Assembly (NCBI RefSeq): GCF_028641065.1
Contig: NW_026576105.1
Coordinates: 124,001 to 188,000, forward strand
Direction: 5' to 3'
Source: Leucoraja erinacea
Lineage: Eukaryota
DNA: 64,000 nucleotides
Shown here: positions 4,446-63,333 of the stretch, piece after piece
How positions within the stretch are numbered: position 1 is the stretch's first letter
Layout of the letters: each line of letters starts with the position of its first letter
Notes under the pieces: model-generated
Databases searched by the model: none
Seen by the model: only the letters and a program-made list of their open reading frames with translations
What the model was told of the DNA's origin: nothing
Program-made: the position numbers and the translations under genes

Positions 4446-4464
4446 AGGACCCAGTCTTCAAGGA

Positions 4465-6857
4465 TGTAGTTGCGGCAGGTACTGTCGCAACGTTTAAGAA
4501 ATAATGCGACAGGTACATGGATAAGATATGTTAAGATGAATGTGGGCCACTCGTAGGCAGGCGTGGTGTGCAGATGGGGTGCATTGGTCATCGTGGGCAG
4601 GTTGTGCCGGAGGACTATTTTTCACGCTGTATGACACTAGAACACTATGCCAAGATCGAAGAACAACAAATCACCTTCCGCTTGTGCAAGGCACAAGTTT
4701 CGGGATTAACATCCGAGTCTTCAACTTTACTAAATCTCTCTTCCGGCCCATTTGGAAGAAAATTCGGCATATCGACGCCTGTCTTGATTATATTGCCTCT
4801 CGGTGTAGGGGGCACAACTTGGCATGTCTACTCACGACATCGTTCGCTCTAGTGAATTGAAAAATCCTGACCTATACAGTCTCTCTCGGAATTGAACATC
4901 TCCAGTCCTGGCAAACACTTTGTCATTAATACTCTGCCACTCCCCAGATTCATGGTAATATCGCTAACATATTGCGATCTGGGGAACATCGCACGTGCAG
5001 TCTCGCCAACGTTCCAGACCAGATTGTTAAACTCCACTTATACCCAACTGCGTGCGACTCCTGCAGTGAAATAAGTCCACACCTCCAGCTGGCTGAGGGA
5101 AACAAATCCTACCATCCACATTCAAATTGACTCGTTGCATTCGTTGCAAGGAAATTGTTCATGAACAAGATGGAGAAAAGGCCATGTCTCTGTGCTCCGT
5201 AACATGCAACTACCACTTACAGTGAGAGTTGGTTCAATATACCTGCCCCTCCCGCGAGGGAGAGTTGGCGCTATGTCCCTTTAAATATTTACAGTCTCAT
5301 TTTAGACTCTTGCTCTCTTTTAGAGACCTACATCAGAGGAACAAAATAAAATACCTCAACTGATCACTTTGTCATATTTTAACCCTCCACAACTACTCAG
5401 GATTTTGTTCGCAGCAGAGGGATAAGGCTTCTGCATTAGCCAGTCCATCTCACAATTCACACTCTCCAATATTAGTACCATTCTTATGAATAGAGTTGCA
5501 TACTTAAATGGATCCTAAATACATTATTTCGAAAAATAATATCCCTCCTCCTGTGGTGTACTGCTCTGAAGTTGTTGTCAGTGAATTGCTTAGGTCGAGT
5601 GCAGCAAACATGACATTTGTTTCTTTGGTCAAGACTTTCTTCAGGATGATCTATCCCCAAACATTTACAGCCGGTGCGATTCTCCTTAACCGATTCAATC
5701 ACCTTGTACATCAACATTCTTGATATCTCCAACGGATCATTGAATTGGGAAGATTTCGCCCTAATATCTGGAATAACATCAAATGCTGTTCACCTCTGTG
5801 TTTTATGAATTAACACATTTCTTTAAAGATAATCTGTTGATCAAGAATATTTCTAGCCGTTGTATATTTACAGCCAGTTATCACATTACACATTATATTC
5901 GCTTATTCTTTACTTCATGTAGTGGCAACAGTTGAAATACATTAATGCTGCTGTTGTAGCTGAATTGTATACGATGGCGTCTAGAAGGTTCCCTGTGGTT
6001 TACATTATTTAGACCCTGCCAAAAAACGATTATCTTTCCGTTTGAAAGGCAGCTCCACGTATAATGCAAGATGAAATTATTAATGGGTGCATATTAAATG
6101 ATGGGAACGGTGTCTGGAAAATGCATTGCAAATTCGACAAATCATATACTGTATTACATCGTAGCTTGTGTGGATAAATGATACATGACACGAATTTTGC
6201 TGCATCTGTGTGCCACGCGTTAAAAGTTAAAAATAGAATGTTCACTCGTATTTTACAGTTCCTTAGTTCTGTTGGTGCTCAGCTGGTGCCTGAGTAGTGA
6301 GCGGTCGCATAATGAGTTTGATCGCTTTGCATCACCTGGGAGCAAACTACTTGTTCAACGGTCCACAATAAATGTCCGCGGGGAGGTGAACGCACGCAGT
6401 CCTTAAGTTTTTTCTAAGAATATAAATATAGCGCTGTTTGACTTCTCACTTTGACTCCTATAAGTTTTGCACTGCATAACTGCGGACGGCTTGAAGGAAA
6501 AATGAGTTGGAAGCGGCATTTGGAAGTTGAATATTATTATTATCCAATTCTAGCAGCTATCGGAGTACCTGGTAGGTCAAGGGAACGCTGTAAGTGGGAC
6601 TGAGATGTGGGATGATGTGTTGATATAGACAATGTCAAAGGTAAAGTGTAAATAGTGTGCGAAACACGGGAATGCTAGACTGCATTCTTCAGGTTAGGGC
6701 GGTATTAACTAGAAAATGTTTGTTTAAGAAATTACTGCAGTTGCTGGCGATAATCGAATCTAGACAAACATGCTGGAGAATTAGACAGCGGGTGAAGCGG
6801 CATCTAGGAAGCGAAAGAATAGGTGACGTTTCGGGTCGAGACTGATCAGTCTGAAGA
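4465..6857. repeat. Segmental duplication copy A (upstream region, exon 1 and start of intron of GPCR-1)
   Basis: Colinear high similarity by eye to 19936-21931; copy B lacks roughly 4725-5085. Confidence 0.9.
6421..6428 (+). promoter_or_regulatory. Putative TATA box of GPCR-1
   Basis: TATAAATA about 80 bp upstream of the ATG. The same motif sits upstream of the orphan exon (21496) and GPCR-4 (49974); CATAAATA at 35460 for GPCR-3. Confidence 0.5.
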
Positions 6858-9668
6858 AGGGTCTCGACCCGAAACGTCACCTATTCCTTTGTTAAGCTAA
6901 TTCATCGTTGGTCGTTCATTGGATCTGGCACAGGTTAATTCTCTTCAGATTCAGGTTTAGGTGCATTGTTGTCATGTCTCTCCGGGAGCTGCAAAAAGCT
7001 ATGGTTTGCAAGAAATCAAAATTAGATCAAATAATATTGAATAACAGTACAAACAATTCAATCTCAGTAACAGGTTGTGTAAAAGGGGAAATCGGAGTGC
7101 AGAGCGTAGTTCAAGTTTGGGAGCGCTCTGCAGCGTATCACATCCACAAAGCCCAATTTCCGCAAGGGGATATAGGTGAAACGGCAATGCCCTGGCATAT
7201 GGAAGAGCGGCTCAGAAGCCTGAGAACAGAGGGGAAAGAGCTGTTCTGGAGTCTGGTGGAGCGAGCTTTAAGCCTTCTCCATTTTCTGCCCGACGAGAGC
7301 AGGAAGTAGAAGGAATGAGCGGGGTGAAACATGTCTCCGTGTCCAAGGGATTGTGAAGTGCGAACGCAGTCAACAGTGCGGAGTCCATTTCGTGATATGG
7401 ACCCGGCGTCTTCCAGAACCCTGTGCAATTTATTCTTTATAGGGCACAAGCTTTGTGCGGCACCGTTGTTGAGAATTATTGTGGTAGGGTGTTACCACTA
7501 ATTCTCTCGGTTTATCCTTTAGGAAGTTGAGTATCCATTCGCAAGCTGGTGCACTGATCGCTGGGCTCTGGGGTTTATCAATGGGTTTGGATGGGAGTAG
7601 TGTTGAAGGCAAGTTCTCCAGCGGAGATTGGGAATCCGACTTTCGACTCCTTGTTGCCCGGCTGTTCCCGGGAAGGGTTTAGGTCCAGGACGATGGCGTC
7701 TGATGCGGACATGTTGCTGCAATATGCAGTCTGCGGTGCAACAAGTGTGGCTGGGAGACAGCTCACGCTGCCTGCGTAGACCGCTGCTAATTAATCCGCA
7801 CAGCTCCTTGGCAAGCACCCAGGTTTGCATGTGGGCAGTTGTTTTCGAACAAATAAGCAAAGCGTAACCCAAGGTTACACAAAAAAAGCTGGAGAAACTC
7901 AGCGGGTGCAGCAGCATCTAAGGAGCGAAGGAAATAGGCAACGTTTCGGGCCGAAACCCTTCTTCAGACTGATCGGGGGCGCGGGTGGGTGGGGACAAGA
8001 AAGGGAAAATTCTTCCCTTCCCTCTCGGTCCACCCCCTCCCCGGGCACTTTCCCTTGCAACCGCAAGAGATGCAACACTTGTCCCTTTACCTCCCCCCTC
8101 GACTCCGTTCAAGGACCCAATCAATCGTTCCAGGTGCGACCGCTGCTCTAGATGTCAGCAGATCTATATCGGCGAGACCAAGCGGAGGTTGGGCGATCGT
8201 TTCGCCGAACACCTCCGCTCGGTCCGCAATAACCAAGCTGACCTCCCGGTGGCTCAGCACTTCAACTCCCCCTCCCACTCCGCCTCCGACCTCTCTGTCC
8301 TGGGTCTCCTCCATGGCCACAGCGAGCAGCACCGGAAATTGGAGGAACAGCACCTCATATTCCGTTTGGGGAGTCTGCACCCCGGGGGCATGAACATCGA
8401 ATTCTCCCAATTTTGTTAGTCCTTGCTGTCTCCTCCCCTTCCTCAGCCCCCCTGCTGTCTCCTCCCATCCCCCAGCCTTCTGGCTACTCCTCCTTTTCCC
8501 TTTCTTGTCCCCACCCACCCCCGCCCCCGATCAGTCTGAAGAAGGGTTTCGGCCCGAAAAGTTGCCTATTTCCTTCGCTCCATAGATGCTGCTGCACCCG
8601 CTGAGTTTCTTCAGCTTTTTTGTGTAACCTTCGATTCTCCAGCATCTGCAGTTCCCTCTGAAACAAAGCGTAACCCAAGTTTGAACCCCGCCTCCAAAAT
8701 TGCATCACGTGTCCCTTACATGTAACTACAGTTTCCTCTTTTCTACACCCGCAGTGAACTTGCTGGCAATTGTGATCCTGTCGCGCAGAAATTGTGGTCT
8801 CTCCAAATGCACCACTCGGTACCTGGTGGCCATGGCGACTGTGGACCTCACGGTGATCGTCTGCGAAGTGATATTACATCGGATTGCCGACCTTTACTGG
8901 GTGAACACATTCCTCTTACACAATACTGTGTGCAGGTCCATTATGTTCCTCGCTCCCGCGGCCGTTGCCTGTTCTGTTTGGCTCACGGTCGCTTTCACAT
9001 TTGATCGCTTTGTGGCCATTTCCACTCAGAATCTGAGAACCAGATACTGCACCGAGAGAACCGCGCTGGTGGTTATAGTGACCCTAACTGCGTTCTTCTG
9101 TTTACAGAACGTCCCCTGGCCTTTTGCGTACATTTATTATCTCAGGGATCAGCAGGGTATACAGTGGGGTTGCCAAATACGATATCAGTTTTATAGCCTA
9201 TCCTCGTGGATAGCATTTTCCTGGACTCAACAGCTGGTAGTCCCAGTCATTCCATTTTGTTTGATTATGATGATGAACGTGCTCACAGTCAGACGCATTT
9301 TAGTGGCCAGTCGTGTCCGCAGAAAACTCCGTGATCTCAGTGGTGAGGACCCCGAGATCGCAAACCGTAGACGGTCCGTAATTTTACTCCTTGCAATCTC
9401 CAGCAGTTTTATGCTGCTCTGGGGCACAACTGTAGTATATTTCGTTTTCTATCGAATTACGAATGCATTTATGTTCAGGGGGTTGAGGAACCGATTTGCA
9501 ACATTTGAACAAACTGGAATTCTGCTACAACTGTTGAACACCTGCACAAACACACTCATTTACACCGTGACCCAGGGGAGGTTCAGAGAGCATCTGTTCC
9601 AGGTACTCATGTACCCCTTCACCCTAACTGTAAGTTTAATAAAATCGAGAAACCCGGGGGTAAAATAA
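6502..9668 (+). CDS. GPCR-1: GPR139-like class A 7TM receptor, 2 exons (6502-6571, 8755-9668), about 327 aa
   Basis: Exon 1 MSWKRHLEVEYYYYPILAAIGVP-G|gtaggt, acceptor cccgcag|TG, in frame. Family motifs NLLAIVILSRRNCGLSKCTTRYLVAMA, SVWLTVAFTFDRFVAI, DPEIANRRRSVILL, NTLIY. Confidence 0.92.
6720..6890. mobile_element. Penelope-derived palindromic terminal-repeat remnant with hammerhead-like core
   Basis: Inverted arms aggtgacgtttcgggtcgagac / gtctcgacccgaaacgtcacct; CTGAAGA...GAAACGTC at 6851-6878. Confidence 0.7.
7874..8663 (+). mobile_element. Penelope-like element fragment (GIY-YIG endonuclease) with inverted terminal repeat and 16-bp TSD, in the GPCR-1 intron
   Basis: ORF CSRCQQIYIGETKRRLGDRFAEH...VAQHFN...EEQHLIFRLGSLHPGGMNIEF. 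About 135-bp inverted repeat (7872-8009 vs 8494-8629). Flanking direct repeat CAAAGCGTAACCCAAG at 7858-7873 and 8664-8679. Confidence 0.9.
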
Positions 9669-15796: not shown

Positions 15797-15834
15797 TGTT
15801 TTTGTAAGGGGCTTAACTTGTTTCCATCACTGTG
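15797..15834 (-). promoter_or_regulatory. V-RSS of V1 (22-bp spacer)
   Basis: Minus strand CACAGTG - atggaaacaagttaagcccctt (22) - ACAAAAACA directly after YYCALRR. Confidence 0.92.
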
Positions 15835-16305
15835 CGCCTCAGTGCGCAGTAATAGACTGCAGAGTCGCTGAGATCCAGCCCTGAGATACTCAAGCTGGTG
15901 AACTTAGTCGCGGTATTGAGCTCAATACGGAAACGAGTATCAGCGTATTGGGCCTTATCTTCATTGTTGTAGGTGTTTCTCCCCATAGTAAACTCGGGCT
16001 GCATGCCTGGATATTGTCGGTACCAGTATAAAGTATATGCTGTCCATGTGGTATCATAGTTACAGGTTAAAGTCACCGCTTCTCCTTTTGTCTTCGTCGC
16101 CGAGGGCAGTGGCTGTGTGACAGATTCTCCGTGAATGGTGACTGTAAAATAAATATATTGAGATAGTAACAGACACCGGAGTGCCATGAGATTGCACTTC
16201 TCAAGCCAAAATCTCACCGAGGAGGGCGAGGGGAACTGAAAATATTGATCCCGAATTACCTGTCAGAAACGCTCCCCACACCACACAGATGCCGAGGAAA
16301 CGCAT
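15835..16305 (-). CDS. V1: T-cell receptor alpha/delta-type variable segment (leader 16305-16260, V exon 16141-15835)
   Basis: Leader MRFLGICVVWGAFLT-G|gtaatt, 118-nt intron, acceptor tttacag. V domain ESVTQ...VTLTCNY...LYWYRQYPG...LSISGLDLSDSAVYYCALR followed by RSS. Confidence 0.92.
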
Positions 16306-19890: not shown

Positions 19891-19935
19891 CAGCTTTCTC
19901 TACACTACCTGTGTATGGAGCATGCTGCCGGAGGA

Positions 19936-21931
19936 GGTAGTTGAGGGAGGTACTGTCGCAACGTTTAAGAAATATTGCGACAGGGACATGGATAAGATGT
20001 GTTAAGAGGATTATGGGCTACACGTAGGCAGGTGGGGTGTGCAGAATGGGTACGTTGGTCATCGTGGGCAATTTGGGCCGGAGGACTATTTTTCACGCTA
20101 GATACTTGACTTCTATGCCAAGATCGAAGAACAACAAGTCACCTTCCGCTTGTGCAAGGTACACGTTTCTGGAATTAACATCCGAGTCTTCAATCCCACG
20201 CCTCAAGCGGGCTAAGGGGAAAAAATCCTACCATCCACATTCAAATTTACTCGCATTGGTTGCAAGCAAATTGTTCATGAACAAGATGGAGACATTGCCC
20301 TCTTTCCGTGTTGTATAACATGCAACGACCATTTGCAGTGAGAGTTCGTTCAATATACCCGCCCCACTCGTGAGGAAAAGTTGGCGCTGCGCCCTTTTAA
20401 ATGTTTACCGTCTCATTTTAACGCCTGCCTCTGGTAGAGACCTATATCCGAGGAACCAAATAAAATACCTCAACTGATCATCACCTTGTCTTATTTTAAT
20501 ACACCATAACTCCTCCTTGTTTTGTTCGCTGCAGAGGGATAAGGCTTCTGCATTAGCCAGTCCATGTCACAATTCACACTGTCCAATATTAGTACCATTT
20601 GTGTGAATAGAGTTGCATACTCCTGTGTTCATGTGCTGTACAGCTCATGAAGTTTTTTGTCTGTGAATAGCTTAGGTCGAGTGCAGCAAACATGAAACTT
20701 ATTTCTTAGGTAAAGGCTTTCTTCAGAATGATCTATCCCCAAACATGTCTCCTTAACCCATTCAATTAGTTCTATCATCTTGCACATCAACATTCGTGAT
20801 ATCTCCAACGGAATAATGCATTGAGAAGATGTCGCCCTAATATCTGGAGTAACATCAAAAGCTGTTCACCTCTGTGTTTTATGAATTAACACATTTCTTT
20901 AAAGGTAACCTGTTGATCAAGAATATTTCCAGCCGCTGTTTATTTCCAGTCAGTTGTCACGTTACACATTATATTCGCCTATTATTTACTTAATGAAGTG
21001 CCAACAGTTGAAATACATTAATGCTGCTCTTGTATCTGAATTGTATACGATGTCGTCTAGAAGGTTCCCTGTGGTTTACATCATTTAGACCCTGCCAAAA
21101 AATGATTATCTTTCCTTTTGAAAGGCAGCTCCACGGATATTGCAAGATTAAATTATTAATGGGTGCATGTTAAATGAAGGGAACGGTGTCTGGAAAATGC
21201 ATTGCAAATGCGACAAGTAATATACTGTATTACATCGTAGCATGTGTGGATAAATGCTACAATACACGAATTTTGCTGCATCTGTGTGCCATGCGTTAAA
21301 ATCTAAAAATAGAATGTTCACTCGTATTTTACAGTTCCTTAGTTCTGTTGGTGCTCAGCTGGTGCCTGAGTAGTGCGCGGTCGCATAATGAGTTTGATCG
21401 CTTTGCATCACCTGCGAGCAAACTATTTGTTCAACGGTCCACAATAAATGTCCGCGGGGAGGTGAACGCACGCAGTCCTTAAGTTTTTCAAAGAATATAA
21501 ATATAGCGCTGTTTGACTTCTCACTTTGACTCATATAAGTTTTGCACTGCATAACTGCGGACGGCTTGAAGGAAAAATGAGTTGGAAGTGGCACTTGGAA
21601 GTGGAATATTATTATTATCCAATTCTGGCAGCAATCGGAGTACCCGGTAGGTGAAGGGAACGCAGTAATTGGGACTGAGATGTGGGATGATGTGTTGATA
21701 AAGACAATGTCAAAGGTAAAGTGAAAATAGTGTGCGAAACACGGGAATGCTAGACTGCATTCTTCAGGTTAGGGCGGTATTAACTAGAACATGTTTGTTT
21801 AAGAAATTACTGCAGTTGCTGGAGACATCGAATCTAGACAAAAATGCTGGATAATTATACAGCGGCTGAAGCGCCATCTATGAAGCGAAGGAATAGGTGA
21901 CGTTTCGGGTCGAGACTGATCAGTCTGAAGA
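19936..21931. repeat. Segmental duplication copy B, ending abruptly at a CR1 LINE
   Basis: Colinear with 4465-6857; similarity stops after ...gatcagtctgaaga, where CR1 sequence begins. Confidence 0.9.
21577..21646 (+). other. Orphan GPR139-like exon 1 (no cognate exon 2 downstream)
   Basis: MSWKWHLEVEYYYYPILAAIGVP-G|gtaggt, 64/70 nt identical to GPCR-1 exon 1, TATAAATA at 21496. The next GPCR exon 2 (36697) has its own exon 1. Confidence 0.9.
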
Positions 21932-23085: not shown

Positions 23086-23089
23086 TAAT

Positions 23090-24461: not shown

Positions 24462-24765
24462 GTCAGAGCAATGGAAACGTTGTGTCTCAGAGGGATCCCA
24501 CGCTGACAAGGGCAGAAGGAGAAACTGCAACTTTAGTCTGCACATACACCAGCGATATGTCTTCCTTATTCTGGTACCGCCAGTACCCAAGCAAGCGACC
24601 GGAAGTTGCGGTCGGGCGTTTCATCGAAGGCAATTTAGATTTCAAGGCAGAATTCGCTCGGACCCGCTTTTCTGATTCCGTTCAGCGTTCAAGCAAAACG
24701 TATTATTTGGCAATCTCGGATTTGCAGCTGTCTGACACGGCGGTATATCTTTGTGCACTGAGGCT
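24462..24765 (+). CDS. V2: TCR alpha/delta-type V exon, open, without an intact native leader
   Basis: Acceptor tgttccag|GT; QSNGNVVSQ...ATLVCTY...LFWYRQYP...AISDLQLSDTAVYLCALR; same family as V3. Confidence 0.9.
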
Positions 24766-24804
24766 CACAATGATGGGAGTGGGCTGGGGCCTCGTACAAT
24801 AACT
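24766..24804 (+). promoter_or_regulatory. V-RSS of V2 (23-bp spacer)
   Basis: CACAATG - 23 nt - ACAATAACT. Confidence 0.88.
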
Positions 24805-29869: not shown

Positions 29870-31473
29870 ATGCGCCTCATGGTACAAACTGCCATGTGGG
29901 CGACATTCATTATCAGTAAGAATTTTCATTGTATTAAACAGCGGCGTTTTTGCAGAAAGATGGCTTCGGTCAACTGCTGTAGCTCATTTGTTGGACCAGA
30001 CCTACAATCCAACACGTATTCTGCGTCTCCAGTAACACAAATATGTTTAAGAGTTTAATGGTTGAAAGAGCAATGCAATCGACATTGGAAGAGTTGCAGC
30101 TCCGTAGCATTGAAATTCCGTGTTCAAAATGTATCATGGGTGATTAAGCCGCATTCCGTGCACTGTGTTCTGTTTGGGAAGAATGCTACGGGAAGGGTGT
30201 CATTCTGCTGGACTCCGTCTATAGATGGTTTACCCATTCCCTGAACGCGTGTATAGATGGTTTACAACGACTTTGCCCGAATTTGATCGCGAGATATATC
30301 GAGCGGTTGGACAGTGTGGGATTGTATTCCTTGAAGCGCAGAGCTGAACGTATGGAGGTGCATGAAATTATAAGGAAAATAGATAGGATGAATGCACCGT
30401 TTTCCTTCACCAAGAGAAAGAGGTTCAATATGATTTAGATCTAGATACAGATCTAAGCGGAGTCATTTTAGAGTAATCTGAGGGGCATTTTATTACTCAA
30501 AGGGTGGTCACTAGATTGAACTTGAGCTGCCGGGTAGTTGAGGCAGGTTCTATAATTGCAGGAATTGGCAGGACAATAATTGTTCGGCACGGTCTTGTAG
30601 CGCCGAGATGGCCTGTTTCCGTGCTGTGATTATTATATGGTTATATGGTTATATAATGGGCATCTGAAAAACACTTGGACAGGTACATCGAGGGGGGAAG
30701 ATATAAAGAGACGCCCGCCTATCGCGGTAACTGGGGCCAACGTAGATGGGGCACCATAGTTGTCAAGGACGAGTTGGGTCGAAAGGTCTCTTTAATGGCA
30801 ACCTCTTTCATGGTCTCTTTTATGTCTATTTGATTCTATGGACGCCGGTAAATCATGCAGGAACGGACAGAATGTTCTTTGTCAAGGAAATATGTAACGG
30901 CTCCACACCACGGGAATATAGAGCTAAATATTATAAATAAATCAAACAGATTCCAGAATAGAACACGAGGGGAGAGTGGTGTGTGATCGATGGCGGTGCA
31001 CTGGGACGAAAGAGGAAGTGAGCGTCAGGATACACTTGCCCGTCTGTGAGATATGCAAGGACTGACTATCTGCCGTAAATACAATTGTTGTTGTCACATA
31101 TTCGTTCCACGGTCTTTTGAGGTCAGTTTTTGATGATTTAAGTCAAATAATCGCTCCGCTTAACGCGTTGCAGGTCGGGGTGATGCTGATTCCGTGACCC
31201 AAGAGAAGACTTCTCTGACGCATACAGAGGGGGAAAACGCCATTTTAACATGCACCTTTGCCAAGGATGGTTACTACTTGTTCTGGTACCGCCAGTACCC
31301 CGACGGTCACCCGGAGTTTCTGCTCCGGAGATACACTGACGGACAGTATAACGACAAGGCGGATTTCGCTCGTGAGCGGTTTTCTGACGAAGTTCAGCAG
31401 TCAACGAAAACATATCAGATGACTATTTCGGAGCTACTGCTGTCTGACACGGCGATGTATTACTGTGCAATCG
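29870..31473 (+). CDS. V3: TCR alpha/delta-type V segment (leader 29870-29915, V exon 31174-31473)
   Basis: Leader MRLMVQTAMWATFII-A|gtaaga, acceptor gttgcag|GT; RGDADSVTQ...AILTCTF...LFWYRQYP...TISELLLSDTAMYYCAI. Confidence 0.9.
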
Positions 31474-31512
31474 CACAGTGTTGGGAACGGCGTGCAGACT
31501 CGTACAATAACT
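31474..31512 (+). promoter_or_regulatory. V-RSS of V3 (23-bp spacer)
   Basis: CACAGTG - 23 nt - ACAATAACT. Confidence 0.92.
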
Positions 31513-35523: not shown

Positions 35524-37604
35524 ATGCACGCGCCTGGAAACGGACCAATCTTCGCGACTTATTACACAATCCTTGCAGTCGTCGGTGTTCCAGGTAAAGC
35601 TTCGCCAAAGTTGATAAATACGTAACCGTGTCCATGATGATCCGATATGTTCCGCTCCGGCCGCCTTACTCTTCGGTTCTACACCACAATTTTCCACAAT
35701 TTGTCCCTTATCGTTGCTCTTAAAACTGCGAATTTTACACGCGGCAGCTTTGGTAAGGGCGTTACTTATTATATCCAGTCTTTACATTATTAAAATAATT
35801 TATTTTATGGCATAACCTATTTTCATAGTTGATTCGAAGTTCCCCTTATGTCTTAGTTTTGTTGCAAATATACTTTACTGGCGCTTTCAGATTCGTCCAT
35901 AAAACTCCACATATCCTGTTCCAATATGTCTACCCTGCCTTGCTTAAAATTGTCCTGTCCATGTTAATCTGTAAGTCATTTCAGTTATTAATTAACCTTG
36001 TCCTGTTTGAAGATAGACAAGTCAAGTGTGACGCGGCACATGTACCAAGCATATGTGGACAAGCTTTTCCCTTTGAGAATAGGGAAGATTCAAACGAGAG
36101 GACATGACTTCAGCATTAAGGGACAGAAGTTTAGGGATAATATGAGGGGGAACTTCTTTACTCAGAGAGTGGTAGCGGTGTGGAATGAACTTCCAGTGGA
36201 AGTGGTGGAGGCAGGTTCATTGGTATCATTTAAAAATAAATTGGATAGGCATATGGATGAGAAGGGAATGGAGGGTTATGGTATGAGTGCAGGCAGGTGG
36301 GACTAAGGGAAAAAAAGTTGTTCGGCACGGACTTGTAGGGCCGAGATGGCCTGTTTCCGTGCTGTAATTGTTATATGGTTTATATGGTTACCATAAAAAT
36401 CGTGCTTGCAACAGCATGACAGGCAACACGCACAAATATACATACCACGTAAATTATACCAGGCAGTGAAATTCATAAGACTGCGCAATTATGTCCATCG
36501 TAGTGCACGCGATAGGCCGTAGAGCTCGGTTTCGCGTGGCCATTTGATATCAGAAACAAGTAACCATCAAACCAATAACCGCTTCACGCTCTGCATTCAT
36601 TGCAACGATATGGGATTGCACGTCTGCTCCCAAAAGCCAGTTATGAAGAGATCACCGATAGATATTATTTACATAATCCCACTCTTTTCCTTGCAGCTAA
36701 CGTCCTGACGATTGCCATTCTGTCCCAGGGAAAGTGCGGCCTCTCGAAATGCATCACTCGGTACCTGGTATTCATGGCGGTGACGGATTTCCTGGTCATC
36801 GTCACGGCTGTGATATTCAGCCGCCTTCGGGCGATATATTTTCCAGTTAGTATCTTGTCCACCACGCCGGGTTGCAGTCTAATCATTGCGCTCAGCTCCG
36901 CTGCTAAAGATGCTTCCGTTTGGTTAACGGTGGCTTTCACCTTCGATCGGTGTGTGGCGATCTGCTGCCAAAAGCTGAAACTGAGGTATTGCACAGAGAA
37001 AACCGCGGCTGTTGTTATTGGAACCGTTTGCTTCCTCGCCTGTTTGAGAAACGTCCCGTTTTATTTTGAATTTGAACCGATGTACATTATCGATACAGTG
37101 CCCTGGTTCTGCAGCATAAAAGAAATATTTTATATTTCCGTCGCTTGGAGAGTGTATGAATGGTCGCACCGGATGTTAAACCCATGCGTTCCTTTCCTAC
37201 TGATTTTGATGCTCAATGTGCTGACGGTCAGATATATCCTGGCCGCCAACAGAGCACGCGGTAGACTTCTGGCCCAGAACAACGGAGAGAAACAGAGGGA
37301 CCCAGAGATGCAGAGCAGGAGAAAGTCCATCATTTTGCTCTTCGCCATCTCGGGCTGTTTTATTCTGCTCTGGGCCACGGACGTTGCAAATTTTCTATTT
37401 GTGCGAATCACAGCGAATAACTATGTCAGCGCCTCTAATTCCAATGACCCGAAGTTCATCTTTCAAGAAGGCGGATATATGTTGCAGTTTCTCAGTTCCT
37501 GCGCCAACACATTTATCTATGCGGGGACTCAGACTAAATTCAGACAGCAGCTGAAGACAACTATCCTATACCCTTTCAACATAATTAGACAACGGTTCAA
37601 ATAA
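35524..37604 (+). CDS. GPCR-3: GPR139-like receptor, 2 exons (35524-35593, 36697-37604), about 325 aa
   Basis: Exon 1 MHAPGNGPIFATYYTILAVVGVP-G|gtaaag, acceptor ccttgcag|CT; SVWLTVAFTFDRCVAICC, DPEMQSRRKSIILL, NTFIY. Confidence 0.92.
36053..36390 (+). mobile_element. Young CR1 3' end in the GPCR-3 intron
   Basis: Near-identical to 44480-44815 and the reverse complement of 63365-63740. Confidence 0.85.
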
Positions 37605-37931: not shown

Positions 37932-38118
37932 NNNNNNNNNNNNNNNNNNNNNNNNNNNNNNNNNNNNNNNNNNNNNNNNNNNNNNNNNNNNNNNNNNNNN
38001 NNNNNNNNNNNNNNNNNNNNNNNNNNNNNNNNNNNNNNNNNNNNNNNNNNNNNNNNNNNNNNNNNNNNNNNNNNNNNNNNNNNNNNNNNNNNNNNNNNNN
38101 NNNNNNNNNNNNNNNNNN
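37932..38118. other. Assembly gap (187 N)
   Basis: Run of N. Confidence 1.
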
Positions 38119-46239: not shown

Positions 46240-46278
46240 GGATTTTGTTCGAGCCCGCGGCACATTTGCACCAGTGTG
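46240..46278 (-). promoter_or_regulatory. V-RSS of V4 (23-bp spacer)
   Basis: Minus strand CACACTG - 23 nt - ACAAAATCC. Confidence 0.85.
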
Positions 46279-46755
46279 TATCGCATAGCACATATGTACA
46301 GAGCGGAATCGGAGAACAAGCCGTCACGTATCACGAACTCGCCCGTCTTTGTAGTTGTATTGAATGTAGCAGAGTATCGATCTGTGATGCCCTTCGCCCT
46401 GTATACGTTATATCCTATAACCTGAATCAGGTACTGCGGAGAATGTTCAAGGCACTGCTTGTACCAGTAAACAAATGGGAGGGAATCGCTGGTTTTCAGC
46501 AGGCACTTGAGTGTTACATCCGTTCCCTCTGCAAACGTGGTTTCTGCTTCGGTCTGTTCCACCGCATTTTGATGGCTCCAGTCTAAGAGAAAATAGAAAT
46601 TGTCAGAATCACCATGATTGAAGCGGCATCAGCATTATCTTTACAGCGGCAGAAATCAGGCGACAACATTCGTGGGAAGTCAGGATTTTTACTGGGTGAA
46701 AATCCTTACTGAGAAGAGACACGAGAACAAAGATCGGGAGGCGATGTTCACACAT
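46279..46755 (-). CDS. V4: TCR alpha/delta-type V segment (leader 46755-46710, V exon 46582-46279)
   Basis: Leader MCEHRLPIFVLVSLL-A|gtaagg, 127-nt intron, acceptor ctcttag; NAVEQTE...VTLKCLL...VYWYKQ...FSDSALYICAMR. Confidence 0.9.
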
Positions 46756-49612: not shown

Positions 49613-50039
49613 CAACAACTATTATGTCTCTTTGCCAAAATGTCATACAACCCGGTTTCCAAATCTCAATTCCGAATCTCAATGTCTTCAGTTTTGCTCC
49701 TCATGAAATATATTTTGTCAATCTCCTTCGACGGTGTTCTATTTCGTAATCAGTTAAGAGACACGAACCTTAATCTCTTATCTCACAAGGGACAATAGTT
49801 CTACCTTGTCCGAAACGAGATTTCCATCACAAATGAGAGCCGTGTCACGTTTTTAATCATGCTGCTGGATTAAGTCACACGTGCGTGAAACGACTTAATT
49901 TGTTTGTTCAGAAAATGTCAATTAACAATTCTGATGATGCAAGTTACTTACAGCCGTTGAGATTGGTGCCTGGTATAAATAGAAGTACATCATATGTGTT
50001 TCAGTAGTTATTGGTTATCAGCACGTCTTTCCAAAGAAA

Positions 50040-52918
50040 ATGCACGCGCCAGGAAATGCACCAATCTTTGCCGTTTACTACACTACTCTTGCGGCGTTTG
50101 GCTTGCCAGGTAAATCTTCCCAGTAAACGCATAGCGGAAACCGAAGTTAAACCGTGTTACATCCAGTTCAGGTCCCTCGTTAGAACGGTTAGAATGGCTA
50201 AGGGGATCAGGGAGTATGGAGAGAAGGCAGGTACGGGATACTGAGTTGGATGATCAGCCATGATCACATTGAATGACGGTGCAGGCTCGAATGGCCGAAT
50301 GGCCTACTCCTGCAACTTTTTTCTATGTTTCTATGTTTTTCTAAGTTTATTTATTGGCACGTACAGTTAAAAGCTTTGTTAATTTGAACGTTTATTTTCC
50401 TTGCACCTGCCTTACTTTGTAATCGACGCCCAGATTCCCCAATCTTTGCTCGCTTTGACATTTAATTTGCTACAATTTAGTGTCTCAATACGGAGAAGGC
50501 ATTCAATTATACTATTCAGTTTTCAGATTGACATTCGTTCGGTTCGTTCTGCAGGTGACAAATGCAGGCAATGCAATATGCACTTATTTGAGTGGCAAAA
50601 CATTGCCTATTCCATTCGCTTCATAGATGCTGCTGCACCCGCTGAGTTTCTCCAGCGTTTTTGTGTATCGCCATCGTATGCGGTCATCGTGCTTTAAACG
50701 AATGTTCTGTATCAGACTTCGCAAGTCCACGAAGGGAGGAAATGCAGATGCTGGTTTAAACCAAAGACTGGTACAAAAGGTTGGAGTATGTAAGCCGGTC
50801 AGGCAACATCTCTGGAGAAAGGGAATATGTGACTTTTCCGGTCGAGACCCTTCTTCACATGTTTAAAATAACAGTTTGTATTTGTTTTTGACAAAGCAGC
50901 TTCCATATGTTCCTTTTCCTGTATGGCGTTACAATGAAGCCGGTCCGCTTATTTACGGCCAGAATCCGATGAGGTCATTACAAACCAAACGGGATAATTC
51001 TCTCCGGCAAAGCCAACCTCTCCCCACATCGAAAGGAAAGTAGCTTAATCGGTATCAGTATTTGAGTTTACCGAGATGCAGTGAAACATTTACTGCTATT
51101 GATATATTATAGGTATATGTATATTATTGCCGTGTATGGAGATACAGTGGAATAATTTGTGATGCAATGATATGCAGGCAACTCATATCGTTCAAGTGTA
51201 CAATAAATAGTTAGTGCTCAGGAAAACAAAATAGCAGAGTGCAGAATATAGTGTTGCATAGACAGAGAAAGTGCAAATAGAAAAGTGTCAGGATGACAAT
51301 GGAGCCGCTTCAATGTTTCGGCGCTGTTTGTAAGATCCCGGAGGTTGCAGGTAGTGGAAGCAGGTAGACTGACAAAAACCTCCGGAAACCTCCGGGAACC
51401 GCAGGGAAACATTGGGTGGGGCGCAATGTCTCCAGATGTTTCTGTTCAGGTTTCCTAAGTGGGACAGGGGCATCGGTTTTAATCTTGTGCCTCGATAGGT
51501 CATGGCAAATGTAGGCAACTATTAGGTAGGTCTATTATCACCAGAGAATGTTATTCATGTTTGTCATTGGTCACCTGAGCCAGGTTCCACTGTTTGCTTT
51601 GGAATGTATGCATTTTCCTAATTTAATATTAATTACATGTTTTCTGCATTTCTTCCGTTCTAAACCATAAACATTTAAAACCAAATACTACTAAGTTAAG
51701 CTATGTGGCAACGTTTCCATTCGGTGTGGTCATTTTAACCGATAAACGGGTCAGGCAGTGTCTATGAAGGACGTGGAGGGGCGAATGTTTCGTGTCAGGA
51801 CTCTTCTTTCATCTGATTGTCGGGGGAAGAGGAAGCTGAAAAAGAGATGGGGGGGGGGGGGGGGGGGGGGGGGGCAAATAGCCTCGCGAGTATTATTTTT
51901 CAACCACAGCAAATTTCACCTGGACCGCATTTCGTTTCTACGTTCAGATAAAAACTGGGGACGCGGCCGGAATTATGATGAATAACTCCATCGTATTTTT
52001 GTTTGTTTCACAGCCAATATGGTGACGATCGTGATTCTCTCCCAGGGAAGATGCGGCCTTTCCAAATGCATAACTCGCTACCTGGTGTTCATGGCGGTGA
52101 CGGATCTCCTGGTCATTCTCGCAGCCGTGATATTGACCCGGCTGCGGCCAATTTATTTCCCGCTCAGTTTCTTGGCAACAAATCCCGCCTGCAGTGTCGT
52201 TATTGCAGTCAGCTGGGCTTGCAAAGGCACGTCCGTCTGGCTAACTGTCGCGTTCACCTTCGATCGGTTCATCGCCATTTGCTGCCAGCGACTGAAACAC
52301 GGTTATTGTACGGAGAAAACGGCGGCTGCAGTCATTGGAGTAATCTGTGCCCTTGTCTGTGTCAAAAACATACCGCTCTACTTTGTTTATGAGCCCGTGT
52401 ATATTATCGATAAGGTGCCCTGGTATTGCAGCATAAAAGAAATCTATTATACTTCAACTTCCTGGCGAGTTTATGACTGGTTGCATCGTATATTAAACCC
52501 ATGTCTCCCTTTCCTTCTGATTTTGTTACTTAACGCTGTGACAGTGAGACACATCTTGGCGGCCAGTGGAGCCCGCAAGAGGCTCCGGGCCCAGAGCAAT
52601 GGAGACAACCAGAGAGATCCAGAGATGGAGAGCAGGAGGAAGTCCATCATTTTACTCTTCGCCATCTCGGGTAGTTTCCTGTTGCTGCGCCTGACGTTCG
52701 TTGTCAACTTCCTGTTTGTGCAGTTTTCGAGCAACAACTATGCGAACAGTTCAAATTCCACTGACCCGAGGTTTATTCTTCAAGAAAGCGGATATATGCT
52801 AGAGCTTCTCAATTCCTGCACCAATTCGGGCATTTATGCGGGGACGCAGACCAAATTCAGAGAGCAGTTGAAAAATGCGGTCACATACCCCTTCAACTTG
52901 ATTAAGAAAATCAAGTAA
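50040..52918 (+). CDS. GPCR-4: GPR139-like receptor, 2 exons (50040-50109, 52014-52918), about 324 aa
   Basis: Exon 1 MHAPGNAPIFAVYYTTLAAFGLP-G|gtaaat, acceptor tttcacag|CC; TFDRFIAICC, DPEMESRRKSIILL, NSGIY; TATAAATA at 49974. Confidence 0.92.
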
Positions 52919-58075: not shown

Positions 58076-58554
58076 GGACATATTCAAGCTGCTCTTTCCC
58101 CTGTACTACACTGGTAATATTCTCAAATCAAAAATATAATTTTTTCTCTGCAGAGATGCTGCATGTCCTGGTGAGGTACTCCGGCATTTTGTTTCTACCT
58201 TCGATTTAAACCAGCATCTGCAGTTCCTTCCTACACATCAAATCATTTTAAAGGAAGCCTGAATTTTACGGATGTGTGCAATGTTTTCCAAACGCTGCGC
58301 GGATAGATATTCAACAAAGCTCTCTGACGTTTCTCCTGGGATCGTAGATCATGCTATTTACATTTCCGTTCCTTTTATTTGAATGATTGAATCGATCAAT
58401 CGACCAATCAATCGACGATCGATCACTCAATCAATACTTTGTTGTCATGTGACAAGTCACTGTGAAAAGGTATGCAATAGTCGCCACGTAAAGAGACGCC
58501 GACAAAGTTACATCTACGCCAGGTCCTCTTTTGTTCTCCTACAACCCCCCCCCC

Positions 58555-58557
<3 letters not shown>

Positions 58558-58587
<30 letters not shown>

Positions 58588-58590
58588 ACA
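58558..58590. repeat. (CA)n microsatellite flanked by poly-C runs
   Basis: Direct reading. Confidence 0.9.
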
Positions 58591-59629
58591 CGCCGGGTCC
58601 TTCAATGTTCTCCCCCCTCCCCCCCCCCCCCCCCGCTTCACGGCGGTCCTGCCACGCCGGTCCTCCTTCGTCATCCCCCAAGCAACATCGTCCACATTCC
58701 CACGTGGTCCATCCTCGTGCACAGGCCGGCGCCCTCGTCGAACGTCGCACCGACCTCTCGACTGTTGCTACTGGGTCTCCTCCTGACGCCTCCGTGGCGC
58801 CGACCCAGGCCCCAGCCGCGGGTTCCGTCGACCCAGGGACCGGCCGCGTGTTCTGCCGACCCAGGCGGAGCAGGTCAGATTATTATTATAATGAACGATT
58901 TCATCACTTACAATGTTATGTCAAACGTGTGGTTACATGTCTCCAGTCCCATGCCCAGCCCTGTGGGCTACGACTCGACGTATGTTATGTTGTACACTTC
59001 CAGTGTAAGTTGCACATTAAATTATGACTTGGAGGAAATTTATCAGGTTTGAATGCTGAGGTAAATGCGAACGGGTCGATCTCACTTTCTGCAGTAGTAG
59101 ACGTTGACAGAGTGCATATTACACTGGGTAATGTCTCACACAATACATATTGCTCACGCACTCTACACAATCATTTTTCGCGTTATAAAGCGAATAACCA
59201 CAGATTCAGAAAATAACAAATTCAAATAGAAAATCAGATATAACCAGCAGGTTAATTTATGACTATTACAAGCAGAGCATGAATTCCTTCAACGGTCTGG
59301 GCATTGAGTGTAAAAAAATTGCAAGTCACGTCTGAAGAAGGGTCTCGAAACATCACCCATTCCTTCTCTCCAGAGTTGCTGCTTGTGCCGCTTGTTGTGT
59401 CTATGTTGGGGTATTGCGTGCAGGCCGCCCCATTTCAGGAAAGAGAGGGAGGCTTAAGAGTGGGTGCGGTGAGGTTTGCCAGAATGGACTAGAGGGTTTT
59501 AGCTACAAGAGTAGATTGGACCAATTTGGATTGGCATCTCTTGAACATCGGTGGCTCGGGAGAGACCTGATAGGAGTAGAAAGGGCTGACAGTCAGAACC
59601 TTTTTCCCCGGGTGTAAATGTTAAAGGCT

Positions 59630-61440
59630 ATCAATCAATCAACCTTTATTGTCATCTTGCAAGCAACAAGTACAGTGCAAAATGAAAAGACGTTTCCCAG
59701 TGAATAGCGGAGCCTCGCACATGAAATTTAAAACACTTCTCACATAATAACACTAAAAAAAACAATCCAGTCCCTGATGGAACAGAATAAATAGTTAAAA
59801 TCAGGTAAAAAACACAATGTTAAAAACAGTAAACCAATCATAAAAAAATGTCCGGGGCCGCTGATTTGAGTGGCCAGTGCCAGTTATTAAAGTGTCCGTG
59901 CCAGCCGCAGAGTCAAGTCAAGTGACTGTGAGTGCAGAGTGACTGTTTAGCAGCCTCACAGCCTGTGGTAGGAAGCTGTTTAGCAGCCTCGTAGTCCGGG
60001 CTTTGATGCTTCGATATCTCTTGCCTGATGGCAAGAGATCCAGGTGTGTGTGGAGGGGGTGCAGTTTGTCCTTGGCAATTCTCTGTGCTTTCTTCAGACA
60101 GCGGCTCTGGAACAGTTCTTGTACCGAGGGTAGGGAGACGCCAATAATCCTCTCTGCTCCCCTCACTACCCTCTGCAGAGCCTTCCTGTCCGAGCAGTTG
60201 CAGGTGCAGTACCACGTATTGATGCAGTACGTGAGTACAGACTCCACCGTGCCCCTGTAGAAAGTCCTGAGGATGTTGGTGGGGAGTGAGGCCTGTTTTA
60301 GTTTCCTCAGGAAGTGCAGTCGCTGATGGGCCCGTTTGACGGTCCCAGTGGTGTTCCTGGACCAGGTGAGGTTGTCCGTTATCTGCACACCGAGGAACTT
60401 TTATGCTCTCCACTCTCTCCACTGCAGTGCCACTAATGTTGAGCGGTGTATGCTCTGGCTGCGCCGTCCTGAAGTCGACAACCATCTCCTTAGTTTTTTC
60501 GACATTCAATTCCAGGTTATTTTTGCCGCACCAGTCCACCAGTTGTTCTACTTCCTCCCTGTACCTTGTTTCGTCATCTCCACTGATGAGTCCCACCACT
60601 GTAGTGTCGTCCGCGAACTTTATGATTTTATTGTCCCTGAATCTGGCAGCACAGTCATGTGTGAGCAGTGTGAACAACAGCGGGCTGAGCACACAGCCTT
60701 GAGGGGAGCCGGTGCTCAGCGTGATCGAGCCTGAAGTGTTCTTGCCAACACGGACTGACTGCGGTCTCTCTGTGAGAAAGTCCAAGATCCAGTGACACAG
60801 GGTGGTGTTGAGGCCCAGCAGGGTTAGTTTCTCCACAAGTCTCTGTGGGAAGATGGTATTAAACGCTGAGCTAAAGTCAATGTACAGGATTCTGGCGTAT
60901 GTGTTCTTGTGTTCCAGATGCGCGATTACTGTGTGCAGCGTGGTGGAGATGGCATCCTCTGTAGAGCGGTTGGGGCGATAGGCAAACTGTAGGGGATCTA
61001 ACGATGAGGGGAGGCTGGCAGTAATGTGGGGTTTCACCAGGCGTTCAAAACACTTCATTATTATTGGGGTCAAGGCGACAGGGCGGTAGTCATTTAGGCA
61101 GGCAACCACTGGTTTCTTCGCTATGGGGATTATCGTGGAAGTTTTGAGGCATGTGGGGACAATGGCCTGACTAAGGGAGATGTTGAAGATGTCTGTTAGC
61201 ACATCTGCTAACTCCTCAGCACATTCCTTTAGCACACGTCCTGGGATGTTGTCGGGTCCGACTGCTTTCCACGGGTTGACCTTAGACAGGATTCTCCGTG
61301 TGTCCATTGTGTCTATGGTCAGGACTGGCTGGTCGGTTTGTAGGCAGGGGCTGGCTCTCCTCTTGGGTGTGGTGTTTGCTGCATCAAAACGAGCAAAGAA
61401 GTTGTTTAATTTATCTGGGAGAGAAGTGTCCGTGTGCAGC
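59630..61440 (-). mobile_element. Rex1/Babar-type LINE (RT nearly intact, one frameshift), nested in an older CR1
   Basis: [48 protein letters not shown]; (TTGA)n tail; CR1 sequence on both sides (59400-59630, 61441-61606). Confidence 0.92.
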
Positions 61441-61606
61441 ACAGCTTGAGGATGGGAGGGGCAATATTTATCAGAGATGGGGGGTTTTAACACAGAGGAC
61501 GGCGGGTGCCTGGAACGCGTTGCTAAGGGGCTGTTGGAGGCAAATCGGATAGTGACGTACAAGATGGTTGCAAATAGACACGTGGATATGCAAGGAAATG
61601 GATATG

Positions 61607-62425: not shown

Positions 62426-63333
62426 CTATTTGAACCGCTTGCGAATTAGATAGAACGGATACTTAACCACTTCCTGCAGCTGCTCTCTAAACTTAGTCTG
62501 TGTCCCCCCGTAAATGCACGAGTTGGTGCAAGAACTTAGTATCTCCAGCATGTATCCACTTTCTTGGAGAATAAACCTGGGGTCGTTGGAATTGGAACGG
62601 GTTGCATAACCGCTGCTTGTAATTTGCACAAAGAGGAAGTTTGCGACGTAGGTCAATCGCAACAGCATAAAACTGCCCGAGATCGCCATGAGTAGAATGA
62701 TCGACTTCCGCCGACTCTCCATTTCCGGGTCACTTTGTTTTCCACCGTTGGTCTGGGCCCGGAGCCTCTTGCGGGCTGCACTGGCAGCTAGAATGTGTCT
62801 GACCGTCACAACATTGAGCAACAGAATTAGTAGGAACGGGAGGCATGGGTTCAAAACGCGGTGTAGACAATCGTACACTATCCATGCAATTGAAGTGTAG
62901 TATGAATCTTTTATGGTGCAAAACCAGGGTATATTATCAATTATGTAGACTGGCTCATATATAAAATAAAATGGGGCGTTCTTCAAACAGCCTAACGCGC
63001 AGACCGTTGCAATAACACCCGCCGCGATTTTCTCAGTGCAATATATTAGTTTCAGTTTCTGACAGCAAATGGCGATGAACCGATCGAACGTGAAAGCGAC
63101 CGTCAACCAGACGGAAGCATCTTTTGAAATCCAGCTGAGGACAATAAGGACCTTGCAGGTCGGAATGGTAGACAGGACTGTGTTCGGGAAATAAATAGCC
63201 CGAAGCCGGCTTAGGATCACGGCGGTGATGATGACCAGGAAGTCCATCACCGCCATGGATACCAGGTAGCGAGTGATACAGTTGGAGAGGCCGCATCTTC
63301 CTCTGGATAGAATCGCAATCGTCACCAAATTCG
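62426..63333 (-). CDS. GPCR-5: GPR139-like receptor exon 2 (exon 1 beyond the window end)
   Basis: Acceptor ttctgcag|CG AAT TTG; open 7TM frame with TFDRFIAICC, DPEMESRRKSIILL, NSCIY; closest to GPCR-4. Confidence 0.9.

What the first reader, a model, noticed from the sequence alone, without database searches (positions are those of the whole stretch)
6502..63333. TCR V segments interdigitated with an expanded GPR139-like receptor family
Seen order: GPCR(+), V(-), GPCR exon 1(+), V(+), V(+), GPCR(+), gap, V(-), GPCR(+), GPCR(-). Established: olfactory receptor genes flank and partly intermingle with TRAV segments at the 5' end of the mammalian TRA/TRD locus. Inference: here a different 7TM family, with very short N-termini and two exons, occupies that niche. 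This points to convergent or ancestral co-housing and co-duplication of a large receptor family with TCR V arrays, possibly with shared enhancers or lymphocyte expression.
Basis: partly seen in the sequence, partly recalled or inferred. Interest (0 to 1): 0.78.

Follow-up and report, generated by a model that had tools for sequence, protein, structure and literature searches.

The report
Orphan receptor genes among skate TCR-V
In little skate DNA, four intact genes of a large shark-and-ray family of orphan receptors sit between four rearranging T-cell-receptor V segments, much as smell-receptor genes sit among mammalian TCR alpha V genes, and nothing found here shows that the two gene kinds work or duplicate together.

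Summary
The window holds four RSS-bearing alpha/delta-type V segments. The N gap lies between genes, and each side of it carries both gene kinds. The window is Leucoraja erinacea, from an unplaced 208,695-base scaffold. The receptors are labelled "probable GPR139" by NCBI but are about 25% identical to human GPR139. They belong to a very large elasmobranch family whose nearest outside relatives are orphan GPR139-like genes of salamanders and coelacanth. Three of the genes (G2-G4) fall in a ray-and-skate-only clade, are under purifying selection, and two have 97% orthologues in Amblyraja. Co-duplication is not supported: the four V segments are 28-54% identical, and no duplicated block holds both a V and a GPCR. 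Four RNA runs showed essentially no reads on V3 or G2. This scan had already noted the same interleaving on at least six other pieces of this genome. It is a new variant of a known kind, comparable to OR genes among mammalian TRAV, and most likely passive co-residence.

The parts
6502..6571 (+). G1 exon 1 (23 codons plus 1 nt, GT donor)
   Evidence: It encodes a short N-terminus and the first half of TM1.
8755..9668 (+). G1 exon 2, a divergent family member with an intact ORF
   Evidence: Pfam 7tm_1 E 7.6e-16. Best identity is about 49% to any of the top 120 relatives.
15797..16305 (-). V1: leader exon 16305-16260, V exon 16141-15835, RSS 15834-15797 (CACAGTG, 22 nt spacer, ACAAAAACA)
19932..21931 (+). 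Segmental duplicate of 4461-6857 (84-92% identity). It carries the orphan copy of G1 exon 1 at 21577-21646 and ends at a LINE fragment.
24462..24804 (+). V2: V exon 24462-24765 and 23-RSS 24766-24804. No canonical leader lies nearby.
31174..31512 (+). V3: V exon 31174-31473 and 23-RSS 31474-31512. There is no convincing leader within 600 nt.
35524..35593 (+). G2 exon 1
36697..37604 (+). G2 exon 2. Its 301 residues are 100% identical to XP_055522139.1 (L. erinacea, 208,695-b scaffold).
37932..38118 (.). Assembly gap. It is intergenic and is followed by GT-rich low-complexity sequence.
46240..46755 (-). V4: leader exon 46755-46710, V exon 46582-46279, 23-RSS 46278-46240 (CACACTG ... ACAAAATCC)
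50040..50109 (+). G3 exon 1
52014..52918 (+). G3 exon 2. It is 98.3% identical to XP_055486182 (L. erinacea, 169,644-b scaffold) and 97.3% to Amblyraja radiata XP_032890430.
62426..63333 (-). G4 exon 2. It is 97.1% identical to A. radiata XP_032890429. Its exon 1 was not found in 63335-64000 and probably lies beyond the window.

Best explanation
This is part of a little skate TCR alpha/delta-type V-segment array that also holds independent, functional genes of a lineage-expanded orphan class-A GPCR family. Databases label that family GPR139, but it is a separate family. Both families are multigene families that grow by local duplication in a transposon-rich, duplication-prone region, so their members end up interleaved. 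The GPCR genes are separate two-exon transcription units kept by purifying selection, and the V segments carry their own RSS. The closeness is most likely passive. It resembles OR genes among the outermost mammalian TRAV genes and, as I recall it, trypsinogen genes inside the TRB locus. By inference, V-to-J joining from distal V segments would delete or invert the GPCR genes lying between them in T cells, as a harmless side effect. What is shown here: the anatomy, the intactness and selection of the GPCR genes, the family assignment and the skate orthology. What is inferred: passive co-residence, independent regulation and a ligand-sensing role.
For: The anatomy and the RSS are. The V segments are alpha/delta-like. 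For V4, TCR alpha or V-delta-1 chains fill nearly all of the top 40 PDB hits. For V1 and V3, the best single-domain matches are TRA and V-delta-1. The hits that carry a TCR name in the profile search are all TCR alpha or alpha/delta variable. All four GPCR exon-2 ORFs are intact. dN/dS is 0.10-0.15 among G2-G4 and 0.26-0.29 against G1, with dS of 1.2 or more. The family is very large: 1681 proteins at E<=1e-5, and 118 of the 120 listed carry elasmobranch names. There are 108 representatives at 50% clustering with E<=1e-30. G2-G4 sit in a 23-row clade of rays and skates only (SH-aLRT 95), inside a 26-row clade that includes sharks (SH-aLRT 100). G1 lies outside the 53-row core clade. Orthologues at 97% identity in Amblyraja carry consecutive accession numbers. 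No duplicated block contains both a V and a GPCR. The V segments are 28-54% identical to each other, whereas G2-G4 are 69-74% identical. Reverse-transcriptase fragments occur throughout the window. The OR precedent is in PMC4574546.
Against: Several points remain open. The interleaving recurs on at least six other pieces of this genome according to unchecked scan notes, which could mean more than chance co-residence. No tissue-labelled RNA was available, so co-expression in lymphocytes is untested rather than refuted. V3 itself had no reads, so the four runs may not include lymphoid tissue. Linkage to J or C segments is not shown. V2 and V3 lack a nearby leader exon.
Confidence: 0.7

Rival explanations
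1. The two families are functionally coupled. The GPCR genes would share enhancers or chromatin control with the V array, or be expressed in lymphocytes, and the co-housing would be kept by selection.
For: Scan notes report the same interleaving on several scaffolds. The GPCR intron and the V leader introns are both phase 1. An orphan GPCR exon 1 lies 2.8 kb upstream of the leader-less V2.
Against: No RNA supports it. Depth on V3 was 0, G2 exon 2 had at most about one read pair in 1 of 4 runs, and no exon1-exon2 or exon1-V joint was listed. Orientations are mixed with no fixed V-GPCR unit. In the horn shark the family sits on four chromosome-size contigs.
Confidence: 0.1
2. V and GPCR genes were duplicated together as cassettes, so the interleaving reflects unit duplication.
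For: One earlier scan note (s1-878299) claims a V copied together with a GPCR on another piece. I did not check it. Here a 2.4-kb duplication did copy a GPCR exon 1.
Against: In this window no duplicated block holds both kinds of gene. The V segments next to the closely related G2 and G3 are only 28% identical (V3 against V4). The four V segments are 28-54% identical, whereas G2-G4 are 69-74% identical. There is no GPCR between V2 and V3.
Confidence: 0.12
3. The interleaving is an assembly artefact, either a chimeric scaffold or a wrong join at the gap.
For: The scaffold is unplaced (208,695 b) and contains a gap.
Against: Each contig on either side of the gap holds both kinds of gene. A second scaffold (169,644 b) carries 98.3% copies of G3 and G2 with consecutive accession numbers. 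The Amblyraja orthologues of G3 and G4 are also consecutive. That consecutive numbers mean adjacent genes is my inference.
Confidence: 0.04

Closest known systems
Olfactory receptor genes among the 5' TRAV genes of mammals (human OR10G2 and OR4E2; mouse Olfr1507-1509)
   Same: An unrelated class-A 7TM multigene family lies between TCR alpha/delta V segments (PMC4574546 Background passages). IMGT lists OR10G3 as the 5' bordering gene in 6 of 9 species (PMC8945572 table).
   Different: This is a different 7TM family: Pfam 7tm_1 only, and OR51E2 scores E 0.28. It has two coding exons instead of one. Four genes are spread among four V segments over 57 kb, and by the scan notes the pattern recurs on several scaffolds rather than at one edge of the locus. 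Chemosensory expression is not shown.
GPR139 (human, PDB 7VUG)
   Same: It is the nearest solved structure and the only PDB hit below E 1e-3 for G2. Both are class A receptors.
   Different: E is only 2.7e-8 and 1.8e-6, with about 25% identity over the aligned stretch. A true orthologue would be far closer; that expectation is recalled, not tested. The family is hugely expanded, whereas GPR139 is a single gene.
GPR139-like orphans of salamanders, coelacanth and teleosts, possibly the 'GPR210' group named in PMC6504862
   Same: These are the nearest non-elasmobranch relatives: Pleurodeles/Ambystoma/Lissotriton at 35%, Latimeria at 33% and Odontesthes at 27%. They too are far from human GPR139 (E 1e-13, 1e-18 and 1e-12). 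PMC6504862 describes a coelacanth/fish orphan next to GPR139/142 (passage).
   Different: They appear to be low in copy number. I could not match them to the paper's Ensembl identifiers. Their position relative to TCR loci is unknown, and the newt TCR paper PMC12698447 does not mention GPR139 (find).
Trypsinogen genes inside the mammalian TRB locus (recalled; no call)
   Same: An unrelated multigene family is embedded in a TCR locus with no known functional link.
   Different: It involves a different locus and a different gene family.

Membership tests
TCR alpha/delta V gene segment (TRAV/TRDV) | V-set Ig domain with the conserved Cys23, Trp41 and YxC104 | tested here: met
   Pfam V-set for 4 of 4. 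The invariant columns C26, W39, D92, A94, Y96 and C98 appear in the 13-row alignment.
TCR alpha/delta V gene segment (TRAV/TRDV) | RSS with a 23-bp spacer directly after the V exon | tested here: met
   4 of 4 V segments have one, with spacers of 22-23 nt. These are the only 4 hits in the window, against a shuffle mean of 0.66. The consensus motifs were recalled.
TCR alpha/delta V gene segment (TRAV/TRDV) | Split leader: a short hydrophobic exon followed by an intron of about 100-250 nt | tested here: inconclusive
   V1 and V4 have one, with introns of about 118 and 127 nt. V2 and V3 have only weak candidates 0.5-1.3 kb upstream.
TCR alpha/delta V gene segment (TRAV/TRDV) | Closer to TCR alpha/delta V than to Ig, TCR beta or TCR gamma V | tested here: met
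   For V4, TCR alpha/delta chains come first in the PDB list and beta chains only from E 5e-7. For V1 and V3 the best single-domain hits are TRA and V-delta-1. The hits that carry a TCR name are alpha or alpha/delta variable. No tree with labelled beta, gamma or Ig references was built.
TCR alpha/delta V gene segment (TRAV/TRDV) | Linkage to TRAJ/TRAC or TRDD/TRDJ/TRDC, and use in rearranged transcripts | not testable with these tools
   The window has no 12-spacer RSS and no C exon was identified. The scaffold flanks could not be fetched. V3 had 0 reads in 4 RNA runs.
GPR139 proper (orthologue) | High sequence identity to vertebrate GPR139 | tested here: not met
   E 2.7e-8 for G2 and 1.8e-6 for G3 against human GPR139, with about 25% identity in the printed alignment.
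Elasmobranch-expanded GPR139-like orphan family (NCBI 'probable GPR139') | Sequence and tree placement within the family | tested here: met
   G2 is 100%, G3 98% and G4 97-100% identical to named or stored members, and G1 is about 49%. All four fall inside the elasmobranch ingroup, with the outgroups separated at SH-aLRT 95.
Elasmobranch-expanded GPR139-like orphan family (NCBI 'probable GPR139') | Two coding exons with a 70-nt phase-1 first exon that encodes the N-terminus and half of TM1 | tested here: met
   G1, G2, G3 and the orphan copy all show it. The G4 exon 1 is outside the window. No RNA joint was seen, so the splice is inferred from GT/AG sites, reading frame and the N-termini of homologues.
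Vertebrate olfactory receptor (OR) family | OR-type 7TM sequence and a single coding exon | tested here: not met
   Only Pfam 7tm_1 is matched. OR51E2 scores E 0.28. There are two coding exons.
Chemosensory receptor repertoire (functional class) | Expression in sensory neurons of the olfactory epithelium | not tested
   The tissues of the RNA runs are coded. The catshark paper reports no GPCR among the top 50 brain-and-olfactory-specific genes (PMC11979771 passage). I did not open its supplement.

The most novel reading that the evidence does not exclude
The GPR139-like family is the missing large chemoreceptor (or other ligand-diversified sensor) repertoire of sharks and rays, animals with only a handful of ORs. 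One of its subfamilies has grown inside the TCR alpha/delta V array since before the split of sharks and rays. If so, co-housing of a stochastically chosen 7TM repertoire with TCR V arrays would be an ancient, possibly regulated, feature of jawed vertebrates (ORs in mammals, this family in elasmobranchs).
Probability: 0.07. Interest if true: 0.85.

Novelty: new variant of a known kind. Interest (0 to 1): 0.42.

Why it matters
Elasmobranchs have very few classical olfactory receptors. The catshark has 2 OR, 6 OR-like, 3 ORA and 3 TAAR genes (PMC11979771 passage). A class-A family with hundreds of members under purifying selection, which I could not find described in print, is therefore a candidate sensory or immune receptor repertoire worth deorphanising. 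For immunogenetics, the finding shows that elasmobranch TCR V arrays also hold an unrelated 7TM family. That gives a second, independent case beside the mammalian OR/TRAV arrangement for asking whether such co-housing is chance, a property of duplication-prone chromatin, or regulated. On a practical level, the NCBI name 'probable GPR139' is misleading for these genes, and some of the NCBI models carry transposon-derived extensions.

Tried and rejected
- **First substitute: fused gene models.** I scanned 10 long GPCR gene models from other elasmobranchs for a fused V-set domain. 0 of 10 had one.
- **Second substitute: chromosome fingerprints.** I ran a V-profile word search hoping to find elasmobranch V proteins on the same chromosome-size contigs as the GPCRs. 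The 120 listed hits were almost all teleost multi-V models. The single elasmobranch hit (Chiloscyllium punctatum, contig 333,820) shares no contig with a listed GPCR, so this was uninformative.
- **Single-V search.** It gave 31 hits and no chromosome information for elasmobranchs.
- **Possible fifth V.** A weak V-like tblastn hit at 49,758-49,965 (E 0.4) just upstream of G3 exon 1 was read in all three frames and rejected as chance.
- **J segments.** The RSS scan found no 12-spacer RSS.
- **G4 exon 1.** It was not found in 63,335-64,000.
- **Expression.** No listed holder of the stretch is on record as RNA. The four raw-read RNA runs gave no support. Their tissues are coded and V3 was also silent, so this is no test of thymus against olfactory expression.
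- **Other tools.** The protein-atlas search could not take a new sequence.
- **Literature.** Searches for GPR139 with shark, cartilaginous, skate, elasmobranch, catshark or chondrichthyan, and for 'coupled receptor 139' with shark, plus orphan/GPCR/elasmobranch, found no paper on this family or arrangement. PMC12227049 (elasmobranch antigen-receptor cluster) has 0 occurrences of GPR139 or GPCR, and PMC12698447 has 0 of GPR139. I did not open supplementary files, and the locus maps or expression tables in them could bear on this.
- **Spliced models.** All searches, dN/dS values and trees used exon 2 or whole ORFs alone.
Full report
**Observation.**
- Four ORFs of 299-334 aa hit Pfam 7tm_1 (E 6e-17 to 2.4e-15), and four ORFs hit the V-set Ig domain (E 2e-14 to 4e-12).
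- tblastn with family members and with the V segments themselves found no further copies. The exceptions were two canonical first exons and two divergent first exons of the GPCR genes.
- A weak V-like hit at 49,758-49,965 (E 0.4) was read in three frames and rejected.
- An RSS scan of both strands gave exactly four hits, each directly after a V exon: CACAGTG/22/ACAAAAACA, CACAATG/23/ACAATAACT, CACAGTG/23/ACAATAACT and CACACTG/23/ACAAAATCC. Fifty shuffles gave a mean of 0.66 hits. There was no 12-spacer hit, so the window holds no J-type signal.
- V1 and V4 have a hydrophobic leader exon about 118 and 127 nt upstream. V2 and V3 have none at a usual distance.

**The gap.** The Ns (37,932-38,118) begin 327 nt after the G2 stop codon, in no ORF, and are followed by GT-rich simple sequence.
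- The left contig holds G1, V1, V2, V3 and G2. The right contig holds V4, G3 and G4. The finding therefore does not rest on the join.
- I could not test continuity directly.
- Indirect support comes from a second little-skate scaffold, where 98.3% copies of G3 and G2 have consecutive accession numbers. That consecutive numbers mean neighbouring genes is my inference.

**Gene structure of the receptors.** In G1, G2, G3 and the orphan copy, exon 1 is ATG plus 69 nt plus one base, followed by GT. Exon 2 follows an AG and completes the codon.
- Full-length homologues start with the same 23 residues.
- By eye, the extracellular N-terminus is only about eight residues long.
- The G4 first exon is not in the 665 bases left before the window ends.
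- No RNA joint was seen, so the splice is inferred. I built and searched no joined model.

**Source.** G2 exon 2 is 301/301 identical to XP_055522139.1 of Leucoraja erinacea, on a record of 208,695 bases. That model's N-terminal extension matches a window ORF at 31,888-32,349.
- A scaffold of 169,644 bases carries XP_055486183 (98.3% to G2) and XP_055486182 (98.3% to G3). It is either a haplotig or a recent duplicate.
- In Amblyraja radiata, XP_032890430 (97.3% to G3) and XP_032890429 (97.1% to G4) lie on a chromosome of 59,888,763 bases.
- XP_032890427 and XP_032890431 lie on that same chromosome. They cluster at 90% identity with little-skate proteins on the window's own scaffold.
- A Rhinoraja protein is 90% identical to G3.
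- The GPCR block is therefore conserved among skate genera. Whether V segments lie between the genes there is unknown.

**What the receptors are.** Human GPR139 is the only PDB hit below E 1e-3 for G2 (E 2.7e-8). It is also the best hit for G3 (E 1.8e-6, about 25% identity); the next hit is 5-HT1A at E 6e-4. They are not GPR139 orthologues.
- The word search gave 1681 proteins at E<=1e-5. Of the 120 listed, 118 carry names from 18 shark, ray and skate species, and none from a chimaera.
- The exhaustive search gave 734 representatives at E<=1e-3 and 108 at E<=1e-30.
- Of nine sampled representatives at 39-47% identity, eight are named elasmobranch proteins and one is unnamed.
- The next nearest are salamander (35%) and coelacanth (33%) 'probable GPR139' proteins, then a teleost and amphioxus.
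- Those proteins are themselves far from human GPR139 (E 1e-13, 1e-18 and 1e-12). They may be the orphan that PMC6504862 calls GPR210 (passage). I did not verify that match.
- In a quick maximum-likelihood tree of 64 rows, G2-G4 fall in a 23-row clade made only of rays and skates (SH-aLRT 95). That clade sits inside a 26-row clade with horn shark and zebra shark sequences (SH-aLRT 100).
- G1 is a long branch outside the 53-row core clade. Long-branch warnings apply to G1.
- dN/dS is 0.10-0.15 among G2-G4 and 0.26-0.29 against G1, with saturated dS. The genes are old and constrained.

**What the V segments are.** V4 matches TCR alpha and V-delta-1 chains first, and beta chains only from E 5e-7. 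For V1 and V3 the best single-domain matches are TRA and V-delta-1; antibodies with two domains score higher by summation.
- The hits that carry a TCR name in both word searches are TCR alpha or alpha/delta variable genes of bony fishes. Callorhinchus Ig-like proteins also appear.
- The four V segments are 28-54% identical to each other, which makes four different families.

**Co-duplication.** Self-comparison found one relevant block: 4,461-6,857 is copied at 19,932-21,931 (84-92% identity). That copy made the orphan G1-type first exon and ends at a LINE fragment.
- No block holds both a V and a GPCR.
- G2, G3 and G4 match only over exon 2 (74-76% at nucleotide level).
- V3 and V4, the V segments nearest the related G2 and G3, are 28% identical.
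- Orientations are mixed.
- This does not support cassette duplication here, though very old events cannot be excluded.

**Is the family tied to TCR loci?** The evidence points both ways.
- For a tie: scan notes, which are unchecked AI notes, list six other pieces of this genome with the same interleaving.
- Against a strict tie: other notes describe clusters with no V segment mentioned. The 40 horn-shark proteins among the top 120 lie on four chromosome-size contigs (26, 8, 5 and 1).
- In batoids the listed hits mostly share one chromosome per species.

**Expression.** No listed holder of 31,100-37,700 is on record as RNA. I laid four raw-read RNA runs with the same species label, from three studies, with 5-32% of each run read, on 31,150-37,149.
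- Depth was 0 over V3 in all four runs.
- Depth was below 1 over G2 exon 1.
- Over G2 exon 2, depth was 0.3-0.7 in one run (about one read pair) and 0 in the other three.
- No exon1-exon2 joint was listed.
- Depth reached thousands only on a repeat at 36,053-36,380, and those reads carry fixed differences, so they come from other copies.
- The tissues are coded and V3 is also silent. This says nothing about thymus against olfactory expression.

**Comparison with what is known.** In human, OR10G2 and OR4E2 lie between TRAV1-1, TRAV1-2 and TRAV2. In mouse, three Olfr genes lie between TRAV1 and TRAV2 (PMC4574546, Background passages). IMGT lists OR10G3 as the 5' border (PMC8945572 table).
- The skate arrangement is the same kind of thing with a different 7TM family, two coding exons and deeper interspersion.
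- I found no paper describing it. I did not see supplementary files.

**Verdict.**
- The arrangement is most likely passive co-residence of two expanding gene families.
- It is a new variant of a known kind.
- The scan had already found it on other DNA of this genome.

Noticed in passing
21577-24804: The orphan duplicate of G1 exon 1 (phase 1) lies 2.8 kb upstream of the leader-less V2 exon, whose acceptor is also phase 1. A splice between them would therefore stay in frame. A LINE fragment lies between the two, and no RNA was examined here. This is the subject of a sibling note (s1-877755).
   Followed up: partly
36053-36380 (copies at 44479-44815 and 63392-63714): A repeat inside the G2 intron draws RNA depth of hundreds to thousands in all four runs. 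The reads carry fixed differences from the window, so they come from other, highly expressed copies. The ORF across it has no Pfam hit.
   Followed up: partly
31888-32349 and 58531-59052: The NCBI models XP_055522139 (G2) and XP_055486182 (G3-like) carry N- or C-terminal extensions that match ORFs far from the receptor exons, in repeat-like sequence. These are probably annotation chimeras.
   Followed up: partly
8755-9668, 36697-37604, 52014-52918, 62426-63333: By eye in the alignment, the family departs from the usual class-A motifs (the motifs themselves are recalled). It has DRF or DRC where DRY is usual. It has N-T/S-x-I-Y where NPxxY is usual, so the proline is missing. G3 and G4 have LLRL where G1 and G2 have LLW in TM6.
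   Followed up: no
59913-61562 (-), 53136-55058 (+), 555-1076 (-): There are several reverse-transcriptase ORFs (Pfam RVT_1, E 4e-33, 2e-21 and 1e-17). One is a 549-aa open frame, and another lies in an AT-rich element (GC 0.35) between G3 and G4.
   Followed up: partly
42000-43200: This is a strongly pyrimidine-rich tract on the + strand (GC skew -0.43, AT skew -0.41) with a 226-aa Pro/Ser/Phe-rich ORF. It looks like low-complexity sequence rather than a gene.
   Followed up: no
L. erinacea scaffolds of 208,695 b and 169,644 b (from accession data, not DNA): Two unplaced scaffolds carry G2/G3 copies that are 98.3% identical to each other. They are either haplotigs of one locus or a very recent large duplication of a V-plus-GPCR block.
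   Followed up: no
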